DNA from: Chrysemys picta bellii | Lineage: Eukaryota | DNA: 64,000 bases | NCBI RefSeq assembly: GCF_011386835.1 | Contig: NC_088803.1 | Location: 11,718,001-11,782,000, forward strand | Direction: 5' to 3' | Part shown: positions 5,332 through 41,965 of the stretch, piece by piece | How the letters are laid out: each line of letters opens with the position of its first letter | How positions within the stretch are numbered: the stretch's first letter is position 1 | Position numbers and translations under genes: made by a program | The notes under the pieces: generated by a model | Databases searched by the model: none | Told to the model about the DNA's origin: nothing | Seen by the model: only the letters and a program-made list of their open reading frames with translations

Positions 5332-5366
5332 TTAGGGATCAGCCCTATTCTCATTCAAATATAGGC

Positions 5367-5780
5367 TGTAGTTCATTTTCTCATTCTGTTATTTGGTATT
5401 ATTATAGTAAATTCATATGCTATTTCATATATAGTCAATGTATGTTAATTAGATTTAAATTGTAGGATTATAGCAGTATAGAACGTAAAAGTATTTTGGA
5501 TTATGAGTGTGTATTAGATATATAAGTAAAGCATTGCTAAAGATTTTAGCTGAGCCAGACTAGGCAATAGGGTTAAGAATGCTTGACATGGGTGGATGAC
5601 ATAGGAATAGCCCTATGCCAGTAAGGTGACAAGATTACTGTAAAAAATGTGCCATTTGGTGATGTTACGGAAAAATAGATTGCAATAGACCACAACGTAC
5701 TGCCCAAGATTATGAGACACTTGATTGTAAAATGAAATGTCCTGACAGCAGGGTACATGTTGTATGTAGATGATAATAAG
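5367..5780 (+). mobile_element. LTR-like element, 5' part (probably continues at 9153-~9670)
   Basis: Starts TGTAG. Paralogous copies contain LTR-like aggcct/tgaggcct motifs. A TATA-like aatataaaag lies in the putative continuation at ~9253. Confidence 0.35.
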
Positions 5781-5789
5781 TGTAGTAGA

Positions 5790-8413
5790 CTCATAGACTC
5801 ATAGACTCTAAGGTCAGAAGGGACCATTATGATCATCTAGTCTGACCTCCCGCATGATGCGGGCCTCAAAAGCTGACCCACCCACTCCTGGAAGAATTTT
5901 CTCCCTTGACTCAGCTGTTGAAGTCCCTAAATCATGATTTAAAGACTTCAAATCACTGAGAATCCTCCAGCCAGCGACCCCCGCCCCATGCTGCTGAGGA
6001 AGGCGAAAAACCTCCAGGGTCTCTGCCAATCTACCCTGGAGGAAAATTCCTTCCCGACCCCAAATATGGCGATCAGCTGAACCCCGAGCATGTGGGCAAG
6101 ATTCTCTAGCCAGACCCTCTGGAAAAAGTTCTCTGTAGTAACTTTTAATATCCCATCATTGACCATTGTTGCTAATTACCAGCGATGGCACGTTATTGAC
6201 CTATTGACTAAAATCACTTTATCCCATCAAACCATCCCCTCCATAAACTTATCAAGCTTAATCTTAAAGCCAGAGAGGTCTTTTGCCCCCACTGTTTCCC
6301 TCGGAAGGCCGTTCCAAAACTTCACCCCTCTGATGGTTAGAAACCTTCGTCTAATTTCAAGCCTAAACTTCCCGACGGCCAGTTTATATCCATTCGTTCT
6401 CATGTCCACATTAGAACTAATCTGAAATAATTCCTCTCCTTCCCTGGTATTTATCCCTCTGATATATTTAAAGAGAGCAATCATATCCCCCCTCAGCCTT
6501 CTTTTGGTTAAGGTAAACAAACCGAGCTCCTCGAGTCTCCTTTCATACGACAGATTTTCCATTCCTCGGATCATCCTAGTGGCCCTTCGCTGTACTCGTT
6601 CCAGTTTGATTTCATCCTTTTTAAACATGGGAGACCACAACTGCACACAGTACTCCAAATGAGGTCTCACCAGTGCCTTGTATAACGGAACCAGCGCCTC
6701 CTTATCCCTACTAGAAATACCTCGCCTAATGCATCCCAAGACCGCATTAGCTTTTTTCACAGCCACGTCACATTGCCGACTCATAGCCAACCTGCTATCA
6801 ACCAGGACTCCGAGGTCCTTCTCCTCTTCCATTACCTCCAACTGATGCATCCCTAGCTTATAACTAAAATTCTTGTTATTTATCCCTAAATGCATAACCT
6901 TACACTACTCACTATTAAATTTCATCCTATTACTATTACTCCAGTTTACAAGGTCATCCAAATCTCCCTGCAGGATATCCCGATCCTTCTCCGAATTGGC
7001 AATACCTCCCAACTTTGTGTCATCCGCAAACTTTATCAGCCCACTCATACATTCGGTTCCGAGGTCAGTAACAAATAGATTAAATAAAATCGGACCCAAA
7101 ACCGAACCTTGAGGAACTCCACTAGTAACCTCCCTCCATCCTGACAGTTCACCTTTTAGTATGACCCGCTGCAGTCTCTCCTTTAACCAGTTCTTTATCC
7201 ACCTCTGGATTTTCATATCGATCCCCATCTTTTCCAATTTAATCAATAATTCCTCATGCGGTACCGTATCAAACGCTTTACTGAAATCGAGGTAAATTAG
7301 ATCCAACGCATTTCCTTTATCTAAATAATCAGTTACTTTCTCAAAGAAGGAGATCAGGTTGGTTTGGCACGATCTACCTTTCGTAAAATCGTGTTGTAAT
7401 TTGTTCCAATTGGCATTGTCCTCAAGGTCCTTAACTACTTTCTCCTTCAAAATTTTTTCCAAGACCTTGCATATTACAGATGTTAAACTAACAGGCCTGT
7501 TGTTACCCAGGTCACTTTTTTTTCCCCTTCTTGAAAATAGGAACCACATTAGCTATTCTCCAGTCAAACGGTACCACCCCCAAGTTTACAGATTCATTAA
7601 AAATTATCGGTAACGGGCTTTCAATTTCTCACGCCAGTTCCTTTAATATTCTCGGATGAAGATCATCCGGTCCGCCTGATTTAGTCCTGTTAAGCTGTTC
7701 GAGTTTGGCTTCTACCTCGGATACGGTAATGCCAATCCCCACTTCTTTATTCCCATCAGTCTCGCTTCTACTATTCCTCAGCCTTTCATTAGCCTCATTA
7801 AATACCGATGCAAAATATTCATTTAGATATTGTGCCATGCCTAGATTATCCTTAATCTCCACTCCATCTACAGTCTTAAGCGGTCCCACTTCTTCTTTCT
7901 TTGTTTTCTTCCTATTTATATGGCTATAAAAGTTCTTGCTATTGGTTTTAATTCCCCTTGCAAGGTCCAACGCTACATGGCTTTTGGCTTTTCTCACTCC
8001 ATCTCTACATGCTCTGACCTCAATAAGGTAGGTTTCTTTGCTGATCCCTCCCATCTTCCACTCCCTGTACGCTTTCTGTTTTTTCTCAATGACCCCTCTG
8101 AGACGCTTGCTTATCCAGCCCTTTCTAAATCTCCTGCCTGCGAACCGTTTTCCCTTTCTCGGGATACAGGCCTCCGACAGCTCCTGCAACCTCAACTTGA
8201 AATAATCCCAGGCTCCTTCTGCCTTTAGATCCCTAAATATGTTAGTCCAATCCACTTCCCTAACTAGTCCCCTTAATTTATTAAAGTTAGCCCTTTTGAA
8301 ATCGTAAACCTTAGTCTCCGATTTAATTCTGTTAATCTTTCCCTTTAGTTTAAACTGAATTAGGTCATGATCACTTGAGCCAAGGTTGCCCCCTATAACC
8401 ATTTCCTCAACCT
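5790..8413 (-). mobile_element. Young CR1 LINE, 5'-truncated, 2.6 kb, present only in unit A
   Basis: (GAGTCTAT)n tail at 5786-5808. ORF2 from the APE end (GSSDHD) through RT to the C-terminus. The empty site is visible in units B-D. Confidence 0.97.
6227..8413 (-). pseudogene. CR1 ORF2 (endonuclease end plus reverse transcriptase), disabled
   Basis: ORF segments 7629-8413, 6905-7549 and 6227-6895 carry YRPVSLTS-like, [23 protein letters not shown] and [10 protein letters not shown] motifs. Lesions: TGA at 7629-7631, +1 A in an A8 run at ~7516-7523, TAG at 6905-6907. Confidence 0.95.
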
Positions 8414-10499
8414 GAGACATAAGGCCTTGTATCAGAGGCTCAGTGTGAGGCCTAAGGCCTGAACTAAAGTAGTGGTCCTGCTTTGCTGATATAAAGCAAA
8501 GAAGCAAAGTTAGCAGAAGTCAGGCCCTGGCTGCTTGTAAGCTCACAGCACAGCGCTGGTATTATAAAAACACACACATTCCCAAGAAGTGCTAGGCACA
8601 GGACAATCCAGCAAATACATTCCAGAAGGGTGGTACCGGAACACCGCAATACCAAGTATGGTACAAACCTCTCCCCCCCCCAAAGTGATAAGAACACACT
8701 GGACGATTCTCAAGATAAGGTCAGGATGACAGAGTGATGGATACAGATGTTTTGATCGAATCAGCATGTACTATGTAATGGGTGGTAACTAACGACATCA
8801 AAGGGTGGTAACTAAACAAGTCAGAGGGCCGATATGTAATTTGTTAGTATTGGTGTATAAAATGGAGTCTCAAAGGGAGTGTCTTTGGCCAGAATAGGGG
8901 GCAGTGGAAAGTCCCTCTACTGACTGAGTCGTGTCCATTGTCATGGGCATACATGTGTACCTGTAACCATTGAGCCAGGGCATTAGGATCTTGCTACATT
9001 TACAATAAACCTGACTGAGTGCCTTTGCAATTGAAATAGGTCTTGTGGTCTCATTGGGTGTAATGATTGAGGTCTGCTTGGCCAATTATCTGCACAGAGC
9101 TGGGACAGCACACACAGAGAGAACACACACATTCAGCCAAGATCTAACCACATTAAAAAAAAAAGACAAACTAAGAAACAACCTATGGGGTGTGGAAATA
9201 CAGATAAGGAAAAGTGGGTATATGCAGAAGGTGTTAGGTGTGGTCAGAAGAACAATATAAAAGAGGCTCCCTGGTTGGGTAAAAGTGGGAAGACTCCATA
9301 GGATGACCCCAAGGGAAACCCCAGCAGGAACCTGTTAAGAGACACATCAGACCCTACAATATTTTTGAGGATGTGAGTATGACTACAGTCACAGACATGG
9401 CATGGGTTTTATGCATGTTGAAGGTGTAATCATAGGTGGCCTATCTGGATGCTCCAGTCAAATGGGAAAAGCCAGTTGGAGCACAGAGAAGATTTTACAC
9501 CTGGGCCCTATATCAAAGACATCATTGAGCAATATGGTAGCTGTGTCCAGACATACACAAGCAGGGTGAGGGCTTTCAAAAAACCTGGTTTTCCCTGCAA
9601 GAGGGAGACAGAGTCATGGAGAGAAACTGAGGCTAGGCTGGATACCAGGAATTTCTTGGCTTCCTAAGAGGATGTGAGTTTGGTTCACATCTTATCCTAT
9701 GACTGAAGATGGAAAACCATCAAGATTGACTTGTAAAGAAGCTTTCATTTAGATGAGACTGAATACAATTTCATAGAGTTTAAGGCCAGAACATGGCAGA
9801 GTCAATCAATTTTTTTTCCATAGGGCCATGGGGGTCAAATGCACCTCCTGTGTAACTCCACAGAGATAAACAAACTAACAACATGGATGAGTCTAGCCCT
9901 TTCAGTTGAGTTATTTCCTCCAGAATCTACTCCCATGCCCATTAAGGATAATCAGAGCATCATAACCTCATAGGTGGCTCCTCAAGGAATTTCCACATGG
10001 TCTGTTTGTTTTAGGAGCTATTGATAACTGCTTTCCTGAGCTGAAGGGATGTTCCTTGTATGCTATGCAGAAGCAGAAGCAATGACAGTGCCCCAAGGTA
10101 TCCTAAGAATAAGCAAAATTTCCTGTTATCAGTCCCACACTGGGCAATGGGAAGCAAATGAGATCTCATTTCACACCGTGAGACTATTGCAGGGAGCTCA
10201 GTGTAGACAGGAAGTAGCTGGCTCAGGGCACAGGGAATGAGGTAGATTCCTTCATCTTTAGGGATCTTCTTCAAGCAAGTGAGTAGCCTGCAGCAGCTGT
10301 ACCCTTTCTGACTGCTGAGAAAAGAGCGGTTGACATTTCTCAAGGTCCTGGACAAGGAACCACAGCACACACACCCCAACCAATCCTATTGAGCTAATTG
10401 GCTTATTTTGGGGACTGAAGGACCAACCCTAACCTAGAAACACAATCTCCAAGCAGAGGATTCAGTTTCCATCTCAGCCATTGGCTTCTCTTTGAATAA

Positions 10500-10790
10500 T
10501 GCAACTCTCCTGGTTCAGGACACCTGTGTTCCCCCTCTGTGGTCCACCAAGGGCAGCCAAGCTAAGTTCTCAACTAATCAGCCATCATTTCTCTTTGGCA
10601 GAGACCCATGTCTTTCTCCCTCCTGAACGGGTTTTTGCACAGTTCCCTGCCTACGGTGTGATAACACCAGCAAGCCAGGCCATGTGAAAGGCCAGTGTCT
10701 CCTTTGCTGTCTCTTTGAAGGCTATAGACCACTGTAAAATGCGAGTGCCAAGTGTGTTTGGTGTCTACAGGATTCAGCAGCAGCTGAGCA
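10500..10790. mobile_element. Fragment of an LTR-like family also found at 62560-63110 (copies in units B-D)
   Basis: Shared cagccatca...tctccctcctga...gcacag...cctgccta blocks with 62560-62720. Confidence 0.45.
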
Positions 10791-11410
10791 GGGATTTCCT
10801 GAATACCAGTGGAACCTGATTCTGGCATTTAGGCACTTAAGTTCCTTCTTGCTCTCGTCTCAAGTAGAGGCAAAGGTAGTCTTACATTTCAGACAGGCGA
10901 ATTGCAAGCTTGAGTCTCTGATGTTAACCCTTCCATCAGGATTTCAGGACCAGGAGACGGTCTTCAGTCAAGTAATGGAATTATTTCAGTAAAGGTCGCC
11001 CCTTTGTGTCAGCCATGTTGTTTTCATTGTGAAATTGTATCATGAAATGAAAGGAAATATAACACCTTTGAAATTTTGTGAACATTCTTCTAATCTTTAT
11101 ATATTTGCTTTTCAATAAATGGATTCATTAGTTGCTTTCTAGAAAGCTAAAACAGGGTAGAGATGACAAACAGGTTACTCTCTAGTTATATATGTGTGGT
11201 GGAGCAGTATAGAGACTGTAGTGAAGGTTCCGTCAAGGTTCTCAGTTGAACAAGAGTCATTTCCCTTGCTCCATTCTATGTCCATGTGATTATCTAGGAC
11301 ATTACACTTAGAATGTATCATGTCCTTTGGTCTTTTTCTGGTGCATAATAAGTATAACCAGTTTGTTTCCTTCTTCTTTCTTTCCCATATCATCCCTCCA
11401 CAGACTGTAT

Positions 11411-11728
11411 GCTAGTACTTGAACCCCATCTTTATACTCCAGTGTATTACTTCCAGGTTAACTGATCCTTCTTAGACCCTTTTTACTCCTCTGTCACCCT
11501 CCCCAAACTCATGGCTAATGCTTTCATCAACACCAGATTGATTTCTTTCTCTGGATGTGTTGAACAAAACTATATAGTTGTCACTTTCGTTGCTACAGAG
11601 AGGAATCTTCTTTCTTTTCATACAGCAATGGCATATGTCTGCTATGTTGCCATATCCAACCCTCTGCCTTAGAGGGCTATCATGAACCAGGGGCAAATGT
11701 GCCTAGATGTCAGCTGGTTCTTGGAGAC
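11411..11728 (+). pseudogene. OR14-like pseudogene fragment (TM2-TM4), unit A; N-terminal ~165 bp deleted
   Basis: Reads EPHLYTPVYYFQVN*SFLD...NTRLISFSGCVEQ...TAMAYVCYVAISNPL, aligning to the 1-531 OR. Confidence 0.85.
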
Positions 11729-14557
11729 AGTGAGGGGAGAGGAAAGGGCAGCTGTACTGTATAATGGGCACTAGGGGCAGCAGAGGGTTTGGGATTCACT
11801 GCACATTAAGGGATTAGGCCTTTTGAAAATGCTACTAGATGCCTATTTGCATCTGTAGATGCCCAAATATCTTTAAACATTTGTCCCATAACACTCATTG
11901 AAAGTCAATGTGACTTAGGCACCTAACTCACTTAAACACTTTTGTAAATCCCCTGAGATACCAATGTCCATCTGTCAGTGCCTAATACCTTAGGAAATCT
12001 GCCCTTTTTCTCTTTCTACCTGAATTATCTGTGTTTAAATTGAGGATAATACTCTTCTCTACCTCTCACAGCAGCTCGGAGGATAAATACTTTTAAGTTT
12101 TTGGGATTCTCAGAGACTTTGTTGATGGGGGACAGGTAATGGTGACATAGACAGGACAATGGAGTGTATCTCATCAAACTTGTGAAGAGACTGAAGTCAA
12201 GCGTTTTACTGTCTGCATGATTTTCCTTTGAGGTTAGATGTTCTCCATCATTAAACTTGTTTGTACAGTCTGATGGATTTCTGATAAATGGTCCCTTCCC
12301 ACAGTTTAAAATTCCCAGCTGCAGAAATGCCCAGGGAGATCTCATCCTCTCACAGAAAGGATAATTTATCCCAGATAAATATTGAATCGAGAGAGTCTTT
12401 TGCACTTTCATAAAAAAACACAAGGCAGAATATGCCATCCAGATCAACAGATCTGAGAACACCGTGAGGAAGAACCCAGTCTCTATATCCATGGTGCCTT
12501 ATATCCTAGGTGAGTGCTCTCACTGCTAGGATGAAACTTATGAGGGAGCTACTTCTGGTCAGAAGAAACCCCTGACTCAAAAGAGGGTTCACAGCTGAGA
12601 ATGCAAAGCCCAGACCAGTGTTTCTGTCCAGTCCAGACTGAGGCATCCAACTCCCTAAGAGTGCTCGGGACACACTATACCTCTCCTTGATATCTTAGGT
12701 GGCTCCCCGCTGAGCGAGCTGGCTTTTGTGAATCCCATTTTGAGGTGCCTATCTCTCCCACCATTCATTCTATAGAATGCCTGGCTGCTAAATTCAGGTT
12801 TTGTGAATCCCAGTGATTTTCTAGGTGCCTATGTCCCTTTGTGGTTTTCTGGTTTGAAGAATCAGAGAAGATGAAACACAGGCCAGTCCATCTTCATTCT
12901 CTCCCCACTGCAGGATTTTCCCTCATCGAATGTTATCAGCTATGTTTATTGAGGTATATTACAGACACTCTCTGTCTCTCTCTCTTCTCATATACTCTCT
13001 CTGTTTCTCATTTAGACCCTCTGCTGACCTGGGAATATTGGATGTATGTAGTGATAGATGAATGTAGCTCACTCTAAATGTACAAAGAGTTCAGGGAGCA
13101 TGAGTTAATATTGAATCTCCTCTCACTGCTTTCTTGTTAATTTAATTGAAATGTTTGGAAGATGCAAGCCTGGAAAACTAATATTCAAGATCAAGATGTT
13201 TTGACATCCATTCCTGGGATGGAGTCCAGTATACATGGGATGTTCTAGAAGTTTTGACTTGAGATTGGTTAGTTATAGACACTGAAAAAGTCCTATTTCT
13301 TACTCAACATTTTATTCCTGGGATAGTTTCTTTTTGTGATTTGGGGTCATCTCTTTTTTTCAAGAAGTTCACATATTGAACATTAGATCACGTCAAACAT
13401 ATTATAATTTCTACCAAAAATGTCAAAGGAAATTAATATTGTTTTTCTCAACACCTTTCCCTGAATTTTTCTTGTATTTTTTTTTTAAATCAGAATGAAT
13501 ACCCACCAAAGGAATAGTTGTGGTTCTCAATAAACCCAAAACATCATATTACATTTTTAGAACGCTGGAAAAAATTGGTTTTTTTTTTTAATTTTTCAAA
13601 GGAAATTTTAACAATTTCAGTGATAATCAATATTCTCCATTTAATAAGGAAGCCAATTTTCATCACAGTACAGAACAAAGAAACACAAAAAGTTCAACAA
13701 ACCTTTTTAGTTTCCCAATTCATAGTTACATTTAATACACCTGTTAGAATCTGCAATGAAATTCAGAGCAACCTGGCCACCAGGAATTTACACAGGGTTT
13801 TAGGCAAGTTATTTCAGAATATTTGGAAAGTCTGTGGGCTAGAGGATTTAATGGGAGAACTCACCTTTGTGTAATTTCTGAGTTGGGTGTACTATGAAAC
13901 AAATCACATTAAGGCACATAAGTGCTTTTGAAAATCCCACTAGATGCCTAAGTACCTTTCAAAATCAGGCCATTCGACTCTTGAAAATTTTACCCTTTCT
14001 TCCCAAATCCCTTATGGTTCTTTGAAAATCCCAGACTAAGTAAGCAAGTGTGATTTATCTTCCTGGTCCATAGGACTCTCACAGAAGAATCTCATGCTAA
14101 ATGAAAAATAAGGCAATAAGAAAGCATTTTTCTCAGCTGAAGTGTATATAATCTTGATGCCAGCTGATGAGCTTCAGTTATAATGAAACTGTTTCCAGAT
14201 TCAGAAGTATTCAACTAGAAGTATGGGATTCAAACGTCAGGAACTTGACCTTTAAGGATGATAGACATGTTTTTATATTTTTGTTAGCTTCACGGGTATA
14301 CATTATATATTTTTACGTGTAGGCAGAATGAGGAATTGGAAAGTCAGGAAATCTTATAAAAGTAGACTAAGTAGAAGTGAGGGAGGTATCTTCCATTATA
14401 GAGAATGGTTTAAATCTTGACTGTCTCATTTTTCAATTCACTGGGCCAGATATCCAATGCAAGTGCAGTCAAGGGGTCAGAACTTCACCTGGTGTAAACT
14501 GGTGTAGCTCTGGAAAGTTATTGCAGCTCTGCTGATATAAAACAGTTGGAAGATATG

Positions 14558-14991
14558 GGGCCAGATTTTCAAAGGAGTTTATGAGCACCTTAAGATGCAT
14601 ACAGGTTCATAGTGCAATTTTCAAAAGGTCCCGAGTAGGCTGGGCACAAAAAAGCTCATCTAGCTTTGAAAGCTCCACTAAAGGGCTAGAATCACAAAGG
14701 CTTGTTGATATTGTCAATGTGCCTAAATTTTAGGCATCTAGAAAATCACCGGGATGATCTGCTCTGGTGTGGGGCAGAAACGTAGCCACCTGGGGGACTT
14801 TTACAACCAAAAATTAGGCGCTGAACAAGTTTAGGCATCTTCGGGTTTGGGGGGCTTCTGAGTGGCGATTTTGTGAATTCCAGTGGGGCCTGATAATGGG
14901 ATTTCGGTGCCTAAAGTGGCAGTTAGGCAGCTGAATCCTGTTGTGACTCCAGTCCTAGGCAGCTACCTAAATAACTTTGAAAATCAGGCCC
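14558..14991. mobile_element. Nested Harbinger-type MITEs (inner ~14683-14955); copies at ~22791-23224, ~31317-31746, ~39885-40337
   Basis: Outer TIR gggccagattttcaaag / ctttgaaaatcaggccc; inner gggctagaatcaca / tgtgactccagtcc. Confidence 0.6.
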
Positions 14992-15406
14992 TGGTTGCTT
15001 AAGAAAGAAAGTTGTCTGTCAGTTTTCAGTAACTCAGAAGGGATTTGGATTCTTTCCAAACAAGTGTATGGGAATAGTTGGGAAAACATGGTGTGTGCAT
15101 GATACCAATGAGATCAGAATTAGAGCTGGAAGAAATGGAGATGGCACCAGTTGTGTCAACCAGGTTTGTGGCTAATGAAATGTCAAGTCACTTTTAAGCT
15201 ACCATCAGATGCCTCAAGCATCAGCAATACCAAAAGCATGCATGTTCATTGTCTCAGCTATCAGCTGAAACATACCGCCAGTAATCAGCAGGAAAGGGGG
15301 AGTTTAAATTATCTTTATAAATTATAATGATTGACTCTGTATTAATTTTCTAACTTCATCAAGTACAATTGTAGAGCTTTTGTTTAATTTTCTGTAGGGA
15401 CTGTTC

Positions 15407-16829: not shown

Positions 16830-17191
16830 CATATAGTCCAAGTTAATGTTTTTAAGGTAAAATAAAATGTGAAATTATTGTTATATGGGATTGTCTCTTG
16901 TTATTTGAATATTACTTATTCATGCGAGTGGTCCTATTGAAGTCAACAATACTAGGCATGTGAATATAATTTGTAACTGGAATTTCTCAAAGGTAGCTCA
17001 ATGGGTTGATTCAAAGGAAGTTCAATGGGATTTTTTTATCTCTAGACACCCTTAAAAGTCCCAACCTCCACACACAAAAACCTGTAGAGATGATGGATTA
17101 GGGGGCAGAGTGCAGAGGGGGAAGCCAACGGGGCATGTTAAATTAACTGATCATATGGCTTTGAATTTTATCCCACAAGTGTAATCTCTAC

Positions 17192-28320: not shown

Positions 28321-28324
28321 AGTG

Positions 28325-31500: not shown

Positions 31501-32161
31501 TCACCGGGATGATCTGCTCTGGTGTGGGGCAGAAACGTAGCCACCTGGGGGACTTTTACAACCAAAATTTAGGCGCTGAACAATTTTAGACATCTTCGGG
31601 TTTGGGGGGCTTCTGAGTGGCGATTTTGTGAATTCCAGTGGGGCCTGATAATGGGATTTCGGTGCCTAAAGTGGCAGTTAGGCAGCTGAATCCTGTTGTG
31701 ACTCCAGTCCTAGGCAGCTACCTAAATAACTTTGAAAATCAGGCCCTGGTTGATTAAGAAACAAAGTTGTCTGTCAGTTTTCAGTAACTCAGAAGGGATT
31801 TGGATTCTTTCCAAACAAGTGTATGGGAATAGTTGGGAAAACATGGTGTGTGCATGATACCAATGAGATCAGAATTAGAGTTGGAAGAAATGGAGATGGC
31901 ACCAGTTGTGTCAACCAGGTTTGTGGCTAATGAAATGTCAAGTCACTTTTAAGCTACCATCAGATGCCTCAGGCATCAGCAATACCAAAAACATGCATGT
32001 TCATTATCTCAGCTATCAGCTGAAACATACCGCCAGTAATCAGCAGGAAAAGGGGAGTTTAAATTATCTTTATAAATTATAATGATTGACTCTGTATTAA
32101 TTTTCTAACTTCATCAAGTACAATTGTAGAGGTTTTGTTTAATTTTCTGTAGGGACTGTTC

Positions 32162-33121
32162 ATGGAAAACAGAGACAGGAGAAATCAATCAGTGACGGAA
32201 TTCAGCCTTCTGGGATTCGGGAATCTCCCTGAACTGAAGACCCTTCTCTTCCTGGTGTTTCTAGTAATCTACATTGCGACCATGGCCGGGAACATCCTCA
32301 TCGCAGCACTAGTTGTGGCTGATCAGCACCTTCATACCCCCATGTATTTTTTCCTTGGGAACTTGTCTTGTTTAGAGACCTGCTACAGCTCCACTGTCCT
32401 GCCTAGAATGCTGGCCAGTCTCCTGTCTGGGGACAGAACCATTTCTGTTAGCAGCTGCATCATACAATTTTATTTCTTTAGTGCTCTGGTGGGTACAGAA
32501 TGTTTCCTCTTATCCATGATGTCATATGATCGGTATTTAGCGATATGCAAACCACTGCATTATGTAGTCCTCATGAATGATAGGTTCTGTCTCCAGCTAA
32601 CTGTTGGATCTTGGATGAGTGGGTTTCTGGCTATGATCATAATAATAATATTGATGTCACAGTTAACTTTTTGTGGTCCAACAGAAATAAACAGTTTCTT
32701 TTGTGATTTCATCCCAGTAATAAAACTCTCCTGCAGTGATCTCCATGTGCTGAAGGTGGTTGCTTTCATATGCTCTTCAATATTCTCAGTGATTCCATTC
32801 ATTTTAACTCTGACATCCTACATTTGCATCATCATCACCATCCTCAGAATCCCTTCCACCACTGGGAAGCAAAAGGCATTTTCCACCTGCTCTTCGCACC
32901 TCATCGTTGTTACCATTTACTATGGGACACTAATCATTGCCTATATGTTACCAAAAACTGATACGTTGAGAAACCTGAATAAAGTATTCTCTGTCTTCTA
33001 CACTGTCATTACACCTTTGCTCAACCCCCTCATCTACAGCCTGAGAAACAAAGAAGTCAAGGAGGCCCTCAGAAAAGCTCTAAGTAAATGTGTGGCTTTT
33101 GCAAGAGTCATGGAAATGTAG
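32162..33121 (+). CDS. Class II olfactory receptor, copy C, 319 aa; all canonical motifs intact
   Basis: MSYDRYLAIC and NPLIYSLRNKEVK intact; private changes Q26K, T48A, G107S, T135V. Confidence 0.97.
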   Translation: MENRDRRNQSVTEFSLLGFGNLPELKTLLFLVFLVIYIATMAGNILIAALVVADQHLHTPMYFFLGNLSCLETCYSSTVLPRMLASLLSGDRTISVSSCIIQFYFFSALVGTECFLLSMMSYDRYLAICKPLHYVVLMNDRFCLQLTVGSWMSGFLAMIIIIILMSQLTFCGPTEINSFFCDFIPVIKLSCSDLHVLKVVAFICSSIFSVIPFILTLTSYICIIITILRIPSTTGKQKAFSTCSSHLIVVTIYYGTLIIAYMLPKTDTLRNLNKVFSVFYTVITPLLNPLIYSLRNKEVKEALRKALSKCVAFARVMEM

Positions 33122-33583
33122 GGTTGGAAGGGACCTTGAGAGGTCATCTCGTCCAACCACCTGCACTGAGGCAGGAACAAATAAACCTAGACCATCCCTG
33201 AGACGGGTTTGACCAGTCTGTTGTTAAAAATCTCCAGTGACTGGGATTCCACAACCTCTGTTGGAAGCTTGTTCCAGACCTTAACTAGCATTATAGATAG
33301 AATCTTTTTCTTCTATCTCACCTAAATCCCTTGCTGCAGATGAAGCCAGTTCCTTTTTGTCCTACCTTCTGTGCACATGGAGAACAATTGATCACTCTCC
33401 TTGTTAGACCAGACCTTAACATATTTGCGGACAGTCATCTGATTCTCCCTTCAGTCTTTTTTCTCAATACTAAATATGCCCAGTTTTTTTTAAGCTTTCC
33501 TCACACATCAGGTTTTCTAAAGCTTTCATCATTTTTGTTGCTCTCCTTTGGACTCTGCATTTTGTCCGCAGCCTTCCTGAAAT
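33104..33583 (-). mobile_element. CR1 3' end fragment, unit C copy
   Basis: Paralog of 16349-16829. Confidence 0.88.
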
Positions 33584-33946
33584 TCATATAGTCCAAGTTA
33601 ATGTTTTTAAGGTAAAATAAAATGTGAAATTATTGTTATATGGGATTGTCTCTTGTTATTTGAATATTACTTATTCATGCGAGTGGTCCTATTGAAGTCA
33701 ACAATACTAGGCATGTGAATACAGGTTGTAACTGGAATTTCTCAAAGGTAGCTCAATGGATTGTTTCAAAGAAAGTTCAATGGGATTTTTTTATCTCTAG
33801 ACACCCTTAAAAGTCCCAACCTCCACACACAAAAACCTGTAGAGGTGATGGATTAGGGGGCAGAGTGCAGAGGGGGAAGCCAACGGGACCTGTTACATTA
33901 ACTGATCATATGGCTTTGAATTTTATCCCACAAGTGTAATCTTTAC

Positions 33947-34848
33947 TGTTAGGATATAGATATTCAGGCCTATCTCTAAGGGCGTATATTTTAAGAATTT
34001 AGGTACATGTTTCTCACGTAGCTAGTTATAGAGGTATAAAAGAAAGAATCAAAATCACTGTCTGCCGGTGTAAGGGCCTTCTCTCACTGTGACAGTCTGA
34101 GGCCCTGTTCTTAAACTAAGGCCTTCGGCTAAGCAGCAGAGGCAGCCATAAACTGGGAAGGCTATGGTCACATCCTCACATTCCAAAGTAATCACATTGA
34201 AATAAGGCAATCTGGGGCTGTTAGAAAGGTGATCCGATCTATCACCTCCAGAGGAAGGGAAGAGCCTAAAAATTTTAAAGAAAACTGATAGCATCCTGTC
34301 TGTCAAGAACTCACTTATCAACAGCTGGGGTGTAAAATCCTCATTTCTTTGTTGTTCTATCACTGTAGTCCCCACTTACCTATTGTTTGTCTGTATAATC
34401 TCTGTCTGGTTCTGTGATTGTTTCTGTCTGCTGTATAATTAATTTTGTTGGGTGTAAATCAATTAAGGTGGTGGAATATAATTGGTTAAATAATTATGTT
34501 AAAATATGTTAGAATTGGTTAATTAAATTTCAGTAAAATGATTGGTTAAGGTGTAGGTAAGCAGAACTCAAGTTTTACTATATAGTCTGCAGTCAATCAG
34601 GAAGTAGGGGGGGAATTGGAAGCATGTTTTGATAAGAGGAGGAATGGGAACAGGGACACAGGCAAGGCTGTATGGTTTTAGAGGTGGGAAATGGGACACT
34701 GAGGAAGAAAATTAAAATCATTGCTTGCTGAAACTTCACCCCAATAAACATCAAATTGTTTGCACCTTCGAACTTCAGGTATTGTTGCTCTCTATTTATG
34801 CAAGAAGAACCAGGGAAGTAAAAGGGTAAAGAAATAAGACCTCTAACA
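33947..34848 (+). mobile_element. Solo LTR, unit C copy
   Basis: TG...CA ends; left TSD TTTAC (one change), right TCTAC. Confidence 0.9.
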
Positions 34849-36403
34849 TCTACCCATGGGTGTCACCAGGCTGTAGTTCATTTTATCATTGTGTTATTTG
34901 GTGTTATGCTCATTTCATGTGCTATTTCATATATAGTCAATGTATGTTAAATAGATTTACGTTGTAGGATTATAGCAGTAAAAAACTGAAAAGTAATTCG
35001 GATGATGAGTGTGTATTAGGTATATAAGTAAAGCATGGGTGGAACACAAGGCCTACAGGCTGAGGCCTGTAAGAATTTAGCTAAGCCAGACTAGATCATA
35101 GGCTTAAGAATGCTTGATATGGGTGGATGACATAGGAATAGCCCTATACCAGGAAGGTCACAAGATAACTGTAAAAGATCTGTCAATAGGTGATGTTATG
35201 GAAAAATAGATTGCAATAGATTGCAATGTACTGCCCAAGATTAAGAGACGCCTGAATGTAAAATGAAATGTCCTGTCCTGACAGCAAGATACATGTTGAA
35301 TGCAGATGATAATAAGTGTAGTAGAAAGAGAGCCCGAGACGTAAGGCCTTGTATCAGCGGCTCATGTGAGGCCTAAGGCCTGAACTAAAGTAGTGGTCCT
35401 GCTTTGCTGATATAAAGCAAAGAAGCAAAGTTAGCAGAAGTCAGGCTCTGCCTACTTGTGAGCTCACAGCACAGGGCTGGTATTAACAAAAACACACACA
35501 TTCCTGAGATGTGCACTCATGCTAGGTTCTCAACTCATCAGCCATCATCTCTCTTTGGCAGAAACCAATCTCTTCTTCCTCCTGAACAGGTTTTTGCACA
35601 GTTCCCTGCATATGGTGTGACAACCCCAAAAAGCCAGGCCATGTGAAAGGCCAGTGTCTCCTTTGCTGTCTCTTTGAAGGCTATGGACAACTGTAAAAGG
35701 CACGTGCCAAGTGTGTTAGGTGTCTACGGGATTCAGCATCAGTTGAGCAGGGATTTCATGAATACCAGTGGGACTTGATTCTGGCATTTAAAGACCTAAG
35801 TCCCGTCATGAATCTAGCCCTTCTTGCTCTCGTTTCAAGTAGAGGCAAAGGTAGTCTTACATTTCAGACAAGCGAACTGCAAGCTTGAGTCTCTGATGTC
35901 AGCCCTTCCGTCAGGATTTCAGGCCGAGGAGATGGTCTTCAGTCAAGTAATTGAATTCTTTCAGTAAAGGTCTCCCCTTTGTGTCTACCATCTTTTTTTT
36001 ATTATGAAATTGTATTGCCTTTGAGTTCCTCATGAGATGAAAGGAAATATAAAACCCTTGAAATTTTGTGAACATTCTTCTAATCTTTATACCTCTGCTT
36101 TTTAATAAATGGATTCATTAGTTGCTTCCTAGAAAGCTAAAACAGGGTAGAGTTGACAAACAGGTTACTCTCTAATTATATGTGTGTGGCGGAGCAGTAT
36201 AGAGACTGTAGTGAAGGTTGGGTCAAGGTTTTCAGTTGAACAAGAGTCATTTCCCTTGCTCCATTCTATGTCCACGTGATTATCTAGGACATTACATCTA
36301 CAATGTATCATGTCCTTTCCTTTTTTTCTGGTGCATAATAAGTATAACCGGTTTGTTTCCTTCTTCTTTCTTTCCCACATCTTCCCTCCACAGACTGTAT
36401 CCA

Positions 36404-36866
36404 ATGCAAGAAATGTCTAGTCAAACCACAGTGACAGAGTTCATTCTGCTGGGATTCCCTATATATTGAGAGCTGTAGATTTTATATTTCATGGCCTTCC
36501 TAGTGGTTTACCTGGCCGATTTGATGAGAAATATTCTTACCGTCATGGGCCTAGCCCTTGAACACCATCTTCACACCTCAGTGTACTTGTTCCTGGTTAA
36601 TTGATCCTTCTTAGACCCTTGTTACTCCTCTGTCCCCATCCAGAAATCCATGGCTGACACTTTCATCAACACCAGATTGATCTCTTTCTCTGGATGTGTT
36701 GCACAAGACTTCACAGTTGCCACTTTTATTGATATGGAGAGGAATCTTCTTTCTTCTTGTACAGCAATGGCGTATGTCTGTTACTCTGCCATTTGCCACT
36801 CTCTGCTTTAGAGGACTTTCAGAAATGATGGCAAATGTGCTCAGATGTCGGCTGGTTCTTGGAGAC
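36404..36866 (+). pseudogene. OR14-like pseudogene, N-terminus to TM4, unit D
   Basis: Near-identical to 27858-28320. Confidence 0.9.
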
Positions 36867-37249
36867 AGTGAGGTGTGGGGAAGGGGCAGCTGTACTGTGT
36901 AATGGGAACTGGGAGTAGAAGAGGGATGGGGTGGGGAAAGGGTGGCTATACTTTATAATGGACACTCGGGCAGCAGAGGGTGAGAGCTAGGCAAGTGGCA
37001 GCTATACTGTATAATGGACACTAGGGGAAGCAGAGGGTGATTGGTGGGGAAGGGCAGCTATACTGTAGGGGCAGCAGAGGTTTTGGGATTCACTGCACAT
37101 TAAGAGCCTAGGCCTTTTGAAAATCCTACTAGATGCCTATTTGCATCTGTAGATGCCCAAATATTTTTAAACATTTGTCCCATAACACTAATTGAAAGTC
37201 CATGTGACTTAGACACCTAACTCACTTACACACTTTTGTAATCCCCTGA

Positions 37250-37518
37250 GGCTAGGTCTACACTACCCGCCTGAATCGGCGGGTAGAAATCGACCTCTCG
37301 GGGACCCGACGGGACGCGACAATCGATCCCCGAATCGACGCTCTTACTCCACCAGCGGAGGTGGGAGTAAGCGCCATCGACAGAAAGCCGAAAGTCGATT
37401 TTGCCGCCGTCCTCACAGCGGGGTAAGTCGGCTGCGATACGTCGAATTCAGCTACGCTATTCACGTAGCTGAATTTGCGTATCTTAAATCGACTCCCCCC
37501 TGTAGTGTAGATGTACCC
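37250..37518. mobile_element. Young CpG-rich Harbinger-type MITE, 269 bp, TSD TGA
   Basis: TIR ggctaggtctacactac / gtagtgtagatgtaccc; TGA at 37247-37249 and 37519-37521. The empty site cccctgagatacc is seen in units A and C. Confidence 0.92.
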
Positions 37519-40444
37519 TGAGATACCAATGTCCATCTGTCGGTGCCTAATACCTTTGTAAATCTGCCCTTTTTCTCTTTCTAACTGAATTATCTGTGTT
37601 TAAATTGAGGATAATACTCTTCTCTACCTCTCACAGCAGCTTGGAGGATAAATACTTTTAAGATTTTGGGATGCTCAGAGACTTTGTTGATGGGGGACAG
37701 GTAATGGTGACATAGACAGGACAATGGAGTGTATCTCATCAAACTTGTGAAGAGACTGAAGTCAAGCGTTTTACTGTCTGCATGATTTTCCTTTGAGGTT
37801 AGATGTTCTCCATCATTAAACTTGTTTTTTATACACTTTTTGATGGGTTTCTCATTAATGATCCCTTCCCACCTGTTTAAAATTCCCAGCAGCAGAAATG
37901 CCCAGGGAGATCTCACCCTCTCACAGAAAGGATCATTTATCCCAGATAAATACTGAATTGAGAAAGTCTTTTGCACTTTCATAAAAAAACACAAGGCAGA
38001 ATATACCATCCAAATCAACAGATCTGAGAACACCGTGGGAACAAGCCAGCCTCTAGATCCATGGTGCCATATATTCTAGGTGAGTGCTCTCACTGCTAGG
38101 ATAAAACTTATGAGGGAGCTACTTCTGGTCAGAAGAAACCCCTGACCCTAAAGAGGGATCACAGCTGAGAATGCAAAGCCTAGATCGGTGTTTCTGTGCA
38201 GCACAGACTCTGTCATCAAACTCCCTAAGAGTGCTCGGGACACACTTCACCTCTTGACATCTTAAGTGGCTCCTCGCTGAGCCAGCTGGCTTTTGTGAAT
38301 CCCATTTTGAGGTGCCTATATCTCCCATCATTCATTCTATAGGATGCCTGGATGCTAAATTCAGGTTTTGTGAATCCCAGTGATTTTCTAGGTGCCTAAG
38401 TCCCTTTGTAGTTTGCTGGTTTGAAGCATCAGAGAAGATGAAACACAGGCCAGTCCATCTTCTTCATTCTCTCCCCACTGGAAAACTAATACTGAAGGTG
38501 AAGTGACTTTGACATCCACTCCTGTGATGAAGTCTCAAATTCTTGGGAAGATCTAGAAGTTTTGACTTGAGATTGGTTAGTTATAGGCTCTGAGAATGTC
38601 CTGTTTCTTGTTCAACATTTTAATCCTGGGATAGTTTCTTTTTGTGATTTGGGGTTATCTCTTTTTGCCAGAAGTTCAGATATTGAACAGTAGATCACGT
38701 CAAAAAATATTTCAATTTCTGCCAAAAATTTCAAAGGAAATGAATATTGTTTTTGTCAACACCTCTCACTGATTTTTTTTCATGTTTTTGTCAAAAAACA
38801 ATGAATATCCAATAAAGGAATATTCGTGGTTCTCAAAAAACCCAAAGCATCATTTAACATTTTTAGAAAGCTGGAAAAAATTGATATTTGTTTTCATATT
38901 CCAAAGACAATGTTAACAATTTCAATGAATATCAATATTCTCCTTTTAGTCAGTTAGCCATTTTTAATCCCAAACAAGAGCAAAAAACACACACACACAA
39001 AAATCAAAAACACTCTTCAGTTTTCTAATTCATAGTTACATTTAATACACCTGTTAGAATCTGTGATGATATTCAAAGAAACCTGTCAGACAGGAATTTA
39101 CGCAGGGTTTTGGACATGTTGTTTCAGAAGAATTGGTATGTCTGTGGGCTAGAGGATTTAGTGGGACAACTCACCTTCATGCTTTCATGTGGTGTGAGGA
39201 CTATGAAACAAATAACTTAGGGCCACATTTAGGTCCTTAATTTCTTTTGAATATCCCACTAGGTGCCTAAATATCTTTTAAAATCAGGCCATTGGGCACT
39301 CTTGAAAATTTTACCCTTTGTGCCTAACTCCATTAGGCTCCTTTGAAAATTCCAGCCTACGTGAACAAGTGTAATTGATCTTCTTGGTCCTTTGAACTAT
39401 CACAGAAGAGTCTGACATTAAACAAAAAATAAGGCAGTAAGAAAGCATGTTTCTCAGCTGAAATATATATAATCTTTATGCCAGTTGCTGAGCTTCAGCT
39501 CTTAGAAAACGGTTTAGAAATTCGGAAGTATTCAACTAGAAGGGTGGGATTTAAACATAAGTAACTTTGACTTTTAAGGGGGATAACAGAGATATTTTTG
39601 TACTTTTGTTAGCTTCACAGGTATACTATTATATATATTTTACTTGTAGGCTGAATGAGGAATTGGAAGGTCAGGAAATCTTATAAAAGTAGACTAAGTA
39701 GAAGTGAGAGAGGTATCTTCCACTATAGAGAATAGTTTAAATCTTGACTGTCTCATTTTTTGAATGCACTGGGCCAGATATTCAATGCCACTGCAGTCAA
39801 TGGGTCAGATCCCCATCTGGTTTAAACCTGTGTAGCTCCTGAAAGTTATTGCAATTCTACTGATATAGAACAGTTGAAGATAAGGGGTCAGATTTTAAAA
39901 GGCATTTGTGGGTGCCTCAAGATGCATACAGACGTGCAGTGCAATTTTCAAAAGGTCCTGCGTAGGTTGGGCACCATCTAGCTCAGCCAGCTTTTAAAAG
40001 TCCAGTAAAGGGCAAGATTCAAAAAGGTACTTTGTTGGCATTGTCAATGTGCCTAAATTTTAGGCTCCTACAAATCCACTGGGATGGCCAGCCATGGTGT
40101 GGGGCAGAAACATAGTGACCTGGGAGACTTTTACAACCAAAATTTAGGTGCTGAACAAGTTCAGGCACCTTCAGGGTTTGGGGGCAGCTGAGTGGGGGTT
40201 TTGTCAATCCCAGTGGGGCCTGATTCTGGGATTTAGGTGCCTAAAGTGGCAGTTAGGAAGCTAAATCCTGTTGTGACTCCAGTCCTAGGCAGCTATTGAC
40301 ATCTTTGGCCACCTAAATAACTTTGAAAATCAGACCCTCATTGCTTAAGAAAGGAAATTGTCTGTCAGTTTTCAGTGATTCAGAAGGGATTTGGATTCCA
40401 TCCATACTAGTGTATGGGAACAGTTAGGAAAGTGTGGTACCTGC

Positions 40445-41565
40445 TGTAACCGTGCCTTAGTGGGTCACAACTGAGGATGCCAAATTCAGGACGAACTGCT
40501 GAGAAATAGGAAAGATACACCCCAAGACTGGTGGCTAATCCCCCATAGGATATACCAAACTAGCAACAAAAGTAAACTTGTTTCACCACACTGGATAACA
40601 AGAAGACATAAAGGCAGTTTCCTCTGGCATTCCAGTTCTTATATCACCACCAAAAACCCTGGATTCAAAGATGAGTGATTCTTTACAATCTCATCAAATA
40701 ATAGGTTCTTCTGATCCCAAAGGACCAGCTACACACCCAGGTCAATATATAACTTAGATCTTATCCAAAAATCACGCTGATGCCAATCTTTTAGTGTCTA
40801 AAATCTAAAGGTTTATTCGTAAAAAAGAAGAAAGAAAGGTGAGAGTTAAAATTGGTTAAAGGAATCAATTGCATACAGTAATGGCAAAGTTCTTGGTTCA
40901 GGCTTGTAACAGTGATGGAATAAACTGCTGGGTTAAATCAAGTTTCTGGAATACATCCACAGCTTGGGTGGGTCATTCAGTCCATTGTTCAGAGTTTCAG
41001 TTTGTAGCAAAGTTCCTCCAGAGGTAAGAGGCAGGATTGGAGACATAATGGACGTGTTTCCAGGGCCTTTTATAGCTTTTTCTATGTGGAGGGCATCCCA
41101 TTGTTCTTACTGTGGAAAATTACAGTAACCAGATGGAATTTGGAGTCACATGGGAAAGTCCCATGTCTATCCATTTCGCTCAGCCATTGCAGGAAGCCAT
41201 TACCTATACTCCAGACAACAAGTTGACAGTCCACTCAGTGTAGATGGGCATTTCCCATGGTCCATTTTCAACCAAGTGTTTCTTGATGAACCATTTAACT
41301 TGAATAGTCCCTTCAAGATGTGCTGGGCGCTATCTTGTGGGCTATACCCCAGGAGCAAACATTTGAAATCCAGGTATAGAGCCAATACTTATAACTTCAA
41401 ATACAAAAATGATACATGCATAGAGATAGCATAATCATAACCAGCAAAACATAACCTTTTCTTAGACATCTCACTCAACAACCTTTGTACAATATTTGCT
41501 GCAAATATAGAACAGTGGTTGCAACAATGATCTATATGGTCATATTTTAATCAGATAATATCACA
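40445..41565 (-). mobile_element. Solo LTR, 1121 bp, 5-bp TSD CCTGC
   Basis: TG...CA ends; CCTGC at 40440-40444 and 41566-41570. Minus-strand TATAAAA (~41065) and AATAAA (~40815). Absent in units A-C. Confidence 0.92.
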
Positions 41566-41882
41566 CCTGCATGATACCAAAGGAGACCAGAGTTCGAGTT
41601 GGAAGAAATGGAGATTGCATTTGGTTGTATTAACAAGGTTTGTGGCTAATGAAATGTCAAGTTACTTTTAAGCTGACATCAGATGCCTCAAGCCTCAGAG
41701 ATACCAAGAAATGCATGTTCACTGTCCGGAGTATCGGGTCAAAAATAACATTAGTAATCACCAGGAAAATGGGAGTTTAAATTATAATCTTTATAGGCTT
41801 AAATTATTGACCCTATATTAAATTTCTAATTTCATCAAATAACATTGTAAAGCTTTGTTTAACTATCTTTTTGGGACTGCTC

Positions 41883-41942
41883 ATGGAAAACAGAGTGAGG
41901 GGAAATCAAACAGTGACAGAATTCATTTATTTATTATTGTGA
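41883..41942 (+). pseudogene. Remnant first 14 codons of a deleted OR paralog (MENRVRGNQTVTEF), reading into a stop after 19 codons
   Basis: Aligns to MENRDRRNQSVTEF of copies A-C including the upstream ggactgctc; its acceptor AG is lost. Confidence 0.8.
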
Positions 41943-41965
41943 GTTATTTTCTGTAGATACAACCC

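What the first reader, a model, noticed from the sequence alone, without database searches (positions are those of the whole stretch)
5363..41928. The OR tandem array is built from chimeric units: A, (D/A), (D/A), D
Seen: four collinear units start at 5363, 18113, 26332 and 34868. Diagnostic indels do not give one tree. At the 5' end B, C and D share a ~2-kb deletion and a 16-bp segment that A lacks. In the OR14 pseudogene A=B and C=D. From ~29.3 kb on A=B=C and D is the outlier (own 262-bp deletion, different OR). Inference: A and D are old (~15-18% diverged) paralogs, and two independent unequal crossovers between them each produced a D-5'/A-3' unit, taking one OR from one to three copies. 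A full birth-and-death history is readable in one window.
Basis: partly seen in the sequence, partly recalled or inferred. Interest (0 to 1): 0.75.

Follow-up and report, generated by a model that had tools for sequence, protein, structure and literature searches.

The report
Chimeric olfactory-receptor tandem array in turtle
Four tandem repeat units in a painted-turtle smell-receptor cluster really are A, D-front/A-back, D-front/A-back, D, as expected when misaligned homologous recombination adds gene copies, so this is a clean example of a well-known process rather than a new one.

Summary
The four collinear units start at 5363, 18113, 26332 and 34868. Site patterns switch from A|BCD to AB|CD to ABC|D (chi-square 923, p about 1e-198). 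Typing against the two-unit A-D array of Emys orbicularis shows B is D-type up to 19466 and A-type from 19520. C is D-type up to about 29239 and A-type from 29347; four-unit site patterns narrow this to 29292-29336.

The chimera model holds, but "two independent A x D crossovers" does not. Unit fronts (5' parts) give (B,(C,D)): C and D share 8 derived sites. Unit backs (3' parts) give (C,(A,B)): 18 shared derived sites against 7 and 6. No two-crossover history predicts both, so at least one more long exchange is needed. Unit A also carries a D-type conversion tract at 11811-12202.

A-to-D divergence ranges from 3 to 24% and is equally uneven in Emys. D lost its own A-family receptor gene after codon 14.

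A second array, A2-C2-D2, lies 70-78 kb downstream, outside the window. There an A x B exchange removed one unit. Whether this array is a true duplicate or an uncollapsed haplotype is open.

The mechanism is ordinary: unequal recombination plus gene conversion in a receptor cluster.

The parts
5363..18112 (+). Unit A. A-type throughout except for one D-type tract. Carries a LINE and a 1956-bp A-type-only segment.
18113..26331 (+). Unit B, a chimera: D-type 5' part (18113-19466) and A-type 3' part (19520-26331).
26332..34867 (+). Unit C, a chimera: D-type 5' part (26332 to ~29292) and A-type 3' part (29336-34867).
34868..42946 (+). Unit D. D-type 5' part and flank, the remnant of its own A-family OR, then the more distant OR gene.
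19466..19520 (.). Switch interval of B (D-type to A-type); equals A 11231-11285. A small AB|CD cluster at B 19420-19435 just upstream proved to be substitutions shared by C and D, not A-type alleles in B.
29292..29336 (.). Switch interval of C (D-type to A-type); equals A 12533-12577 and D 38103-38147. The 44 bp have no variable site among the four units.
11811..12202 (.). D-type gene-conversion tract inside unit A. It is flanked by A-type sites at 11787 and 12263. B keeps the ancestral A-type sequence here (B 20046-20436). The tract is shared with A2 of the second array.
18113..18501 (.). Patch at the unit start where B and D are 98.3% identical (7 differences in 417 sites), while C differs from B by 4.6% and from D by 5.4%. 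Probably a later B/D exchange.
15407..16366 (+). Intact OR gene of unit A (319 aa; Pfam 7tm_4). Has P294 in the conserved SLRNK motif.
23640..24599 (+). Intact OR gene of unit B (319 aa). Has R124G in the DRY motif.
32162..33121 (+). Intact OR gene of unit C (319 aa). An identical protein is encoded again about 70 kb downstream (C2).
41966..42946 (+). OR gene after unit D (326 aa). About 24% nucleotide and 27% amino-acid divergence from the A/B/C gene.
41883..41925 (+). First 14 codons of unit D's own A-family OR, left after a non-homologous deletion. Shared with Emys.
27864..28316 (+). OR pseudogene fragment (aa ~8-154) in unit C. Copies lie at 36407-36862 (D), 11409-11720 (A) and 19644-19955 (B). 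The A and B copies lack 149 and 156 bp.
5790..8410 (-). 5'-truncated LINE with a reverse-transcriptase domain, inserted in the front of unit A. Present in A2 and Malaclemys, absent in Emys.
8593..10548 (.). 1956-bp segment of A-type fronts only (A, A2, and the Malaclemys and Emys A-units). Absent from all D-type fronts, including Emys D.
37242..37512 (.). 271-bp repeat insertion in D and D2 only (85% identical to 49643-49926). Absent from C and C2, so it was inserted after C's front was copied from D.
40439..41564 (.). 1126-bp segment of D-type units only. Present in D, D2, Emys D and Malaclemys D.

Best explanation
The window holds a tandem olfactory-receptor (OR) array of the western painted turtle. 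The ancestral state was two old paralogous units, A then D.

Homologous but misaligned recombination, offset by one unit, inserted two chimeric units in the painted-turtle lineage. This could be unequal crossing-over (non-allelic homologous recombination, NAHR) or an equivalent homology-driven template switch. B is D-type up to 19466 and A-type from 19520. C is D-type up to ~29292 and A-type from 29336. Each event added one copy of the A-family OR gene.

These two exchanges were not the whole story:
- At least one further long exchange is needed, either between the 3' parts of A and B or between the 5' parts of C and D.
- A short D-type conversion tract sits in A at 11811-12202.
- B and D exchanged sequence in the first ~400 bp of the unit.
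- In a second copy of the array outside the window, an A x B crossover removed one unit.

Shown: the chimeric structure, the switch intervals, the ancestral two-unit state and the conflicting genealogies. Inferred: the recombination mechanism, and the order and number of events.
For: Structure:
- Collinear units and 96% identity at one-unit offset.
- Three-block topology switch with 85, 89 and 594 supporting sites; chi-square 923, p = 1.5e-198.
- Typing at 597 diagnostic sites defined by the Emys A- and D-units gives clean d-to-a switches in B and C, all-d D and D2, and a-type A apart from one tract.
- Both switch intervals are gap-free, and the C interval has no variable site among the four units.

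Ancestral state:
- The Emys orbicularis orthologous locus has just A then D.
- The Malaclemys locus also has two OR genes.
- In the 3' parts the painted-turtle copies form one group against Emys plus Malaclemys, support 100/99.

Additional exchanges:
- Fronts: C and D share 8 derived sites that B and Emys D lack.
- Backs: A and B share 18 derived sites, against 7 for B+C and 6 for A+C.
- In the A tract, B groups with Emys A at 100/100.
- B-D distance is 1.7% in cols 1-420 and 4.4% in the next segment.
- In the second array, A2 is A-like in its 5' part and B-like in its 3' part.

Assembly: it was built with HiFi reads averaging ~14 kb, longer than one unit (PMC13077969).
Against: - The order of the B and C events cannot be fixed. 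Every two-step path fails one genealogy.
- The Malaclemys A-unit carries a D-type tract whose right edge (cols 3205-3313) falls in the same interval as the C switch. That edge may therefore be an old conversion boundary or a recombination hotspot rather than C's crossover point.
- No read-level proof of the B-to-C adjacency was obtained. Only short contigs from public runs were available, and none of those listed bridges the switch.
- Concerted evolution could mimic the single grouping of the painted-turtle copies.
Confidence: 0.8

Rival explanations
1. One reading: only two events, each an independent unequal crossover directly between A and D.
For: Both chimeras are D-5'/A-3' with different switch points. 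A, B and C look nearly star-like in raw distances in the 3' part, with 59, 56 and 76 odd sites.
Against: In an A-B-D array a second A x D exchange is offset by two units and yields five units, not four. Alternatively the two events sit on different haplotypes and need a third event to be combined. The model also predicts the same order of B and C in fronts and backs. Observed: fronts (B,(C,D)) with 8 shared derived sites, and backs (C,(A,B)) with 18 against 7 and 6. It also leaves the A tract and the B/D patch unexplained.
Confidence: 0.07
2. Gene conversion only. Whole A-type units were duplicated first, and their 5' parts were later overwritten by D-type sequence (1.4 kb in B, 3 kb in C).
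For: Conversion clearly operates here: the D-type tract in A, a similar tract in the Malaclemys A-unit, and the B/D patch.
Against: It needs a new junction between the tail of one unit and an A-type front. It also needs loss of the LINE and the 1956-bp segment from two units, plus two long conversions that both end exactly at the unit start. All three tail-to-front junctions are the ancestral A-tail to D-front junction seen in Emys. Unequal exchange explains this with no extra step.
Confidence: 0.06
3. Assembly artefact: B and C are alleles or haplotigs of a single chimeric unit that were mis-joined in tandem.
For: The assembly is a primary/merged one from a heterozygous animal (0.48%; PMC13077969). 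A second, 3-unit array differing by about 0.6-1% lies 70-78 kb away and could itself be an uncollapsed haplotype. The short-contig check could not bridge the junctions.
Against: B and C differ by 2.4% in the 3' part and by 6-15% between the two switch points, far above heterozygosity. HiFi reads of ~14 kb exceed the 8.2-8.5 kb unit. The C-type junction is assembled twice (C and C2) with distinct flanking variants. Alleles found only in B, only in D or only in C2 occur in independent public runs.
Confidence: 0.04
4. One-step replicative triplication. A single break-induced or template-switching replication event copied the A-3'/D-5' segment twice, switching back at two different homologous positions.
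For: Raw distances among A, B and C in the 3' part are close to a star. The pairwise divergences of all young copies are similar, at 2-4%.
Against: Polarised sites show resolved and conflicting genealogies rather than stars. The 271-bp repeat insertion and the conversion tracts show that events were spread over time.
Confidence: 0.03

Closest known systems
NAHR / unequal crossing-over in olfactory-receptor clusters, e.g. the human OR8U8/OR8U9 to OR8U1 fusion (Hasin et al. 2008, PMC2570968)
   Same: Exchange between tandem paralogs in direct orientation. The breakpoint lies in a short tract of perfect identity: 119 bp in OR8U1, at most 44 bp for unit C here. The result is a change in copy number and chimeric units.
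   Different: Here the breakpoints lie in non-coding sequence 2.8 and 4.1 kb upstream of the gene, so the OR proteins are not chimeric. The products are duplications, not a deletion or fusion. The exception is A2 in the second array, which is the deletion product.
Birth-and-death evolution and lineage-specific OR expansions in turtles (Vandewege et al. 2016, PMC4825420)
   Same: A species-specific tandem expansion of one OR subfamily in the painted turtle, alongside pseudogene fragments and a deleted paralog.
   Different: That study is repertoire-level. This locus gives base-level junctions, plus outgroup loci that show the pre-expansion state.
Interlocus gene conversion in segmental duplications (e.g. 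Dumont 2015, PMC4467073)
   Same: Short patches of donor-type sequence flanked on both sides by recipient-type sequence: the A tract at 11811-12202 and the Malaclemys A-unit tract.
   Different: The tracts here are about 0.4-1 kb of aligned sequence. They sit in a 1-kb stretch that also holds two crossover intervals.

Membership tests
Tandem duplicates made by homologous unequal exchange (NAHR) | New units are collinear with both parent paralogs, with no indel or filler at the join. | tested here: met
   MAFFT alignment: the B and C switch intervals are gap-free.
Tandem duplicates made by homologous unequal exchange (NAHR) | The parental type changes once along each new unit, from the downstream parent in the 5' part to the upstream parent in the 3' part. 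| tested here: met
   Typing at 597 Emys-defined sites: B changes d to a at cols 1366/1420 and C at cols 3205/3313. Segmentation agrees.
Tandem duplicates made by homologous unequal exchange (NAHR) | The breakpoint lies in a tract of high identity between the parents. | tested here: met
   The C switch is a 44-bp interval with no variable site. Both switches lie in the 5' third of the unit, where the A and D types are 88-97% identical (83-85% within the OR-pseudogene stretch between the two switches), against 80-85% further 3'.
Tandem duplicates made by homologous unequal exchange (NAHR) | The pre-duplication state, with the two parents adjacent, exists in an outgroup. | tested here: met
   Emys orbicularis L008 has an A-unit followed directly by a D-unit.
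Tandem duplicates made by homologous unequal exchange (NAHR) | A reciprocal deletion product, or copy-number variation among individuals. | tested here: inconclusive
   A 3-unit version (A2 = A-5'/B-3', then C2, D2) exists 70-78 kb away in the same assembly. Whether it is an allele or a paralogous block is unknown.
Interlocus gene-conversion tract | Donor-type patch bounded on both sides by recipient-type sequence, with no change in copy number. | tested here: met
   A 11811-12202 is d-type between a-type sites at 11787 and 12263. B and Emys A keep the a-type.
Olfactory receptor (Pfam 7tm_4, class A GPCR) | Full-length match to PF13853 or PF00001 with an intact reading frame. | tested here: met
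   7tm_4 E-values of 6.6e-49 and 4e-48 for the A and D genes. The B and C genes are 98-99% identical to A and intact.
Uncollapsed haplotig / false duplication | The copies differ at about the heterozygosity level and are otherwise collinear. | tested here: not met
   For B against C: 2.4% to 15% divergence and different switch points, against heterozygosity of 0.48%. For block 1 against block 2 the test is inconclusive: 0.1-3% divergence per kb.

The most novel reading that the evidence does not exclude
The ~1-kb stretch A 11.8-12.6 kb (C 28.5-29.35 kb) may be a recurrent recombination hotspot. It has been used at least four times in two genera:
- the C switch;
- both edges of the D-type tract in A;
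- the D-type tract in the Malaclemys A-unit, whose right edge falls in the same interval as the C switch;
- the A x B crossover that made A2.

The 4-unit and 3-unit arrays in the assembly could also be the two haplotypes of one animal. The reference genome would then have caught a segregating OR copy-number polymorphism together with its exact NAHR junction.
Probability: 0.25. Interest if true: 0.45.

Novelty: new member of a known kind. Interest (0 to 1): 0.32.

Why it matters
Few loci show every step of gene-family growth at base resolution. This one has the ancestral two-unit state in a relative, two chimeric duplication products with narrow breakpoints, a deletion product, conversion tracts and a dead paralog. 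That makes it a useful teaching and benchmarking case for recombination-detection methods and for checking how well long-read assemblies resolve OR arrays. It does not change what is known about how OR families evolve.

Tried and rejected
- A global MAFFT alignment of whole units misplaced the 5' end of A because of its 4.6 kb of extra sequence. I redid it with A cut into its three homologous pieces.
- Change-point search on A/B/C alone in the 3' part found no breakpoints. The (A,B) signal appeared only after polarising with outgroups.
- dN/dS among the A, B and C genes (0.24-0.80, from 9-11 differences) is too noisy to interpret.
- Laying public runs on 26000-31999 gave only short contigs. 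No listed piece bridges the C switch or the B/C junction. All 40 listed variant letters are alleles of paralogous units. This is inconclusive for adjacency and copy number.
- Pfam scans of ORFs upstream of the LINE reverse-transcriptase domain (8464-10376) found nothing. The nature of the 1956-bp segment, and whether it was inserted or deleted, stay open.
- I first read the Malaclemys extra piece as an old remnant of a shared chimeric unit. It is 99-100% identical to that species' own A-unit, so it is a recent local duplicate or an assembly issue.
- I could not fetch the 19.4 kb between the window end and the second array. The extent of that duplication and any gap there are untested.
- The large protein search was not used, because family scans and cluster look-up sufficed.
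Full report
**What is in the window**

The window is part of chromosome record CM062330.1 of assembly GCA_011386835.2. Window position 1 is record position 11718001. [quoted passage not shown] It was built from PacBio HiFi reads averaging ~14 kb, plus 10x, Hi-C and Bionano data. Haplotype divergence is 0.48% (PMC13077969).

Six-frame ORF listing and Pfam show four intact olfactory-receptor (OR) genes on the + strand:
- 15407-16366, 23640-24599 and 32162-33121: 319 aa each, 98-99% identical.
- 41966-42946: 326 aa, 73% amino-acid identity to the others.

NCBI names these genes 'olfactory receptor 11A1-like' and '10A4-like'.

**Checking the observation**

Self-BLAST shows one-unit-offset identity of about 96% over 8-9 kb. 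The four units start at 5363, 18113, 26332 and 34868. In this report the front (or head) of a unit is its 5' part, the back (or body) is its 3' part, and the tail is the stretch after the OR gene.

A whole-unit alignment misplaced the front of A because of its extra sequence. Local BLAST showed that A 5363-5789, 8411-8592 and 10549 onward are the homologous pieces. All later work used those pieces.

- A 1956-bp segment in A only.
- 16-bp and 15-bp segments in B, C and D only.
- 149-bp and 156-bp segments in C and D only, inside an OR pseudogene fragment.
- A 259-bp stretch missing from D only.

Site patterns were segmented with a BIC penalty. This gives three blocks:
- A|BCD: 85 sites.
- AB|CD: 89 sites.
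- ABC|D: 594 sites.

A further rate change falls inside the coding sequence. The pattern-by-block table gives chi-square 923, p = 1.5e-198.

**Outgroups and typing**

A 90%-identity cluster look-up found orthologues in other turtles, and their loci were fetched.

Emys orbicularis (L008) has a plain two-unit array:
- An A-unit without the LINE but with the 1956-bp segment.
- A D-unit directly after it, with the 1126-bp D-only segment, the 14-codon remnant and the D gene.

I used sites where the Emys A-unit and D-unit differ as type markers. Each painted-turtle unit was then typed at 597 such sites:
- D and D2 are D-type throughout.
- A is A-type apart from one tract.
- B is D-type to B 19466 and A-type from 19520.
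- C is D-type to col 3205 and A-type from col 3313. The four-unit patterns narrow this to C 29292-29336, a 44-bp interval with no variable site.

Both joins are gap-free. They lie in the 5' third of the unit. There the two types are 88-97% identical (83-85% within the OR-pseudogene stretch between the switches), against 80-85% further 3'.

All three tail-to-front junctions are the ancestral A-tail to D-front junction. This is what homologous unequal exchange offset by one unit predicts. A non-homologous duplication or whole-unit duplication would not produce it.

Segment trees and polarised shared-derived sites give two conflicting genealogies.

In the fronts (cols 421-1316), C and D share 8 derived substitutions. 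B, A, Emys A and Emys D all lack them. The genealogy is (B,(C,D)), with support 95/93.

In the backs (col 3296 to the tail), A and B share 18 derived sites. B+C share 7 and A+C share 6. The genealogy is (C,(A,B)), with support 100/99.

I enumerated the possible paths:
- B first, then C from D x B. This fits the fronts but predicts (A,(B,C)) for the backs.
- C first, then B from C x A. This fits the backs but predicts (D,(B,C)) for the fronts.
- Two independent A x D events. These predict the same order in both parts, and within one array would give five units.

At least one more long exchange is therefore required. It lay either between the backs of A and B or between the fronts of C and D. 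It could have been a conversion or a duplication-deletion cycle.

**Further exchanges seen directly**

- A 11811-12202 is D-type between A-type sites at 11787 and 12263. B keeps the ancestral A-type there and groups with Emys A at 100/100. This explains the cluster of 20 'B-only' differences at B 20188-20467.
- B and D differ at 7 of 417 sites in cols 1-420, against 39 of 887 in the next segment. C is the outlier there.

**Divergence between A and D**

A-to-D divergence varies along the unit:
- 8-12% in the front.
- 15% in the pseudogene stretch.
- 3% at cols 2261-2975. That figure reflects the D-type tract in A; B against D is 6.3% there.
- 8-11% around the C switch.
- 16-20% further on.
- 24% in the coding sequence.

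The same profile appears between the Emys A- and D-units, so the unevenness is ancient.

The coding sequence is the most diverged part because D lost its own A-family OR. Only 14 codons remain, at 41883-41925. They sit 40 bp upstream of the start codon of a more distant OR. Emys shares the structure.

**A second array outside the window**

The exact protein of the C gene is encoded twice on the chromosome. Walking with exact-protein look-ups recovered 39 kb of a second block, 70-78 kb downstream.

Its composition:
- C2 is 99-100% identical to C and has the same switch.
- D2 is 98.3-100% identical to D and has the same 271-bp repeat insertion.
- At least 10 kb of downstream flank is collinear with the window.
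- It has only three units.

A2 carries the LINE, the 1956-bp segment and the D-type tract of A. From about col 2915-3294 onward it groups with B, and it shares B's 12-bp tail deletion. A2 is therefore an A-5'/B-3' fusion, the deletion product of an A x B unequal crossover.

B's front branches outside C, C2, D and D2. So B predates the split of the two blocks, and block 2 lost a unit rather than block 1 gaining one.

Block divergence is 0.1-1.7% per kb in the array and 1-3% downstream. This overlaps the animal's heterozygosity. I cannot tell a true segmental duplication from an uncollapsed haplotype, and I could not fetch the 19.4 kb between the window and block 2.

**Dating and the Malaclemys locus**

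- The LINE in the front of A is present in Malaclemys and absent from Emys.
- In the backs, all painted-turtle copies group together against Emys plus Malaclemys, 100/99. The copies therefore arose, or were homogenised, after the split from Malaclemys.
- Paralog distances of 2-4% compare with about 2% for painted turtle against Malaclemys and about 4% against Emys.
- The Malaclemys A-unit has its own D-type tract at cols 2275-3205. Its right edge falls in the same interval as the C switch.
- Malaclemys also has a recent partial self-duplicate and lacks the D front.

Within about 1 kb there are thus at least four exchange boundaries in two genera. This suggests a local hotspot. It also means the C 'switch' could be an inherited conversion edge rather than the crossover point itself.

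**Assembly check**

One search of public runs and one lay of contigs on 26000-31999 returned only short contigs. No listed piece bridges 26331/26332 or the C switch. All 40 listed variant letters match alleles of paralogous units. Some match alleles found only in B, only in D or only in C2. The paralog-specific variants therefore exist in independent samples, but adjacency is unproven.

Three points argue against a B/C mis-join:
- B and C differ by 2.4-15%, far above heterozygosity.
- HiFi reads are longer than one unit.
- The C junction was assembled twice.

**Comparison and verdict**

NAHR-made chimeric ORs and copy-number variation are documented in humans (PMC2570968). Species-specific OR expansions are documented in turtles (PMC4825420). 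Interlocus conversion is common in duplicated DNA.

This locus is a well-resolved new example of that known process. It is wrong or overstated on the number and independence of events, on a uniform age for A and D, on the copy count, and on the history being readable from one window.

Noticed in passing
outside the window: record CM062330.1 11801399-11840788 (L004, L002, L006): A second, 3-unit copy of the array (A2-C2-D2) with at least 10 kb of collinear downstream flank lies 70-78 kb downstream. It differs from the window by 0.1-3% per kb. It is either a true segmental duplication or an uncollapsed haplotype.
   Followed up: partly
window 49644-49933: A 288-bp repeat copy, 85% identical to the D-only insertion at 37242-37512, is present in the window but absent at the matching place in the second block. 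It is a young insertion or an insertion polymorphism.
   Followed up: partly
window 23640-24599 and 15407-16366: The gene of unit B has R124G in the conserved DRY motif. The gene of unit A has P294 where B, C and D have L in the SLRNK motif. Both are still open reading frames, but these changes may impair function.
   Followed up: no
window 26000-26400 (and the matching ends of the A and C tails): Word depth in public-run contigs is very high (up to ~24,000), so the end of each unit's tail and the unit boundary lie in a high-copy repeat.
   Followed up: no
L007 (Malaclemys terrapin CM051169.1) 12126-13559: Malaclemys has a 1.4-kb piece that is 99-100% identical to its own A-unit, inserted between the A tail and a D-unit that lacks its first ~3.3 kb. 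This is a separate recent rearrangement or an assembly problem.
   Followed up: partly
window 28326-28521 and 36872-37067: The 156-bp segment found only in C and D is an expansion of a ~56-bp tandem repeat. A and B have fewer repeats.
   Followed up: partly
window 1-546 (-), 47859-48732 (-), 54026-54362 (+), 55129-55998 (-): More OR genes and fragments flank the array: a partial gene at the window start, a frameshifted pseudogene near 48 kb, a short fragment near 54 kb and a truncated 289-aa ORF near 55.5 kb. The stretches 47439-48916 and 54657-56165 are 80% identical paralogs.
   Followed up: no
window 8587-8592 and 10549-10554: The 1956-bp A-type-only segment is flanked by an imperfect 6-bp direct repeat (AAGTGC / AAGGGC). 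This fits either a target-site duplication or a microhomology deletion, and which one is unresolved.
   Followed up: partly
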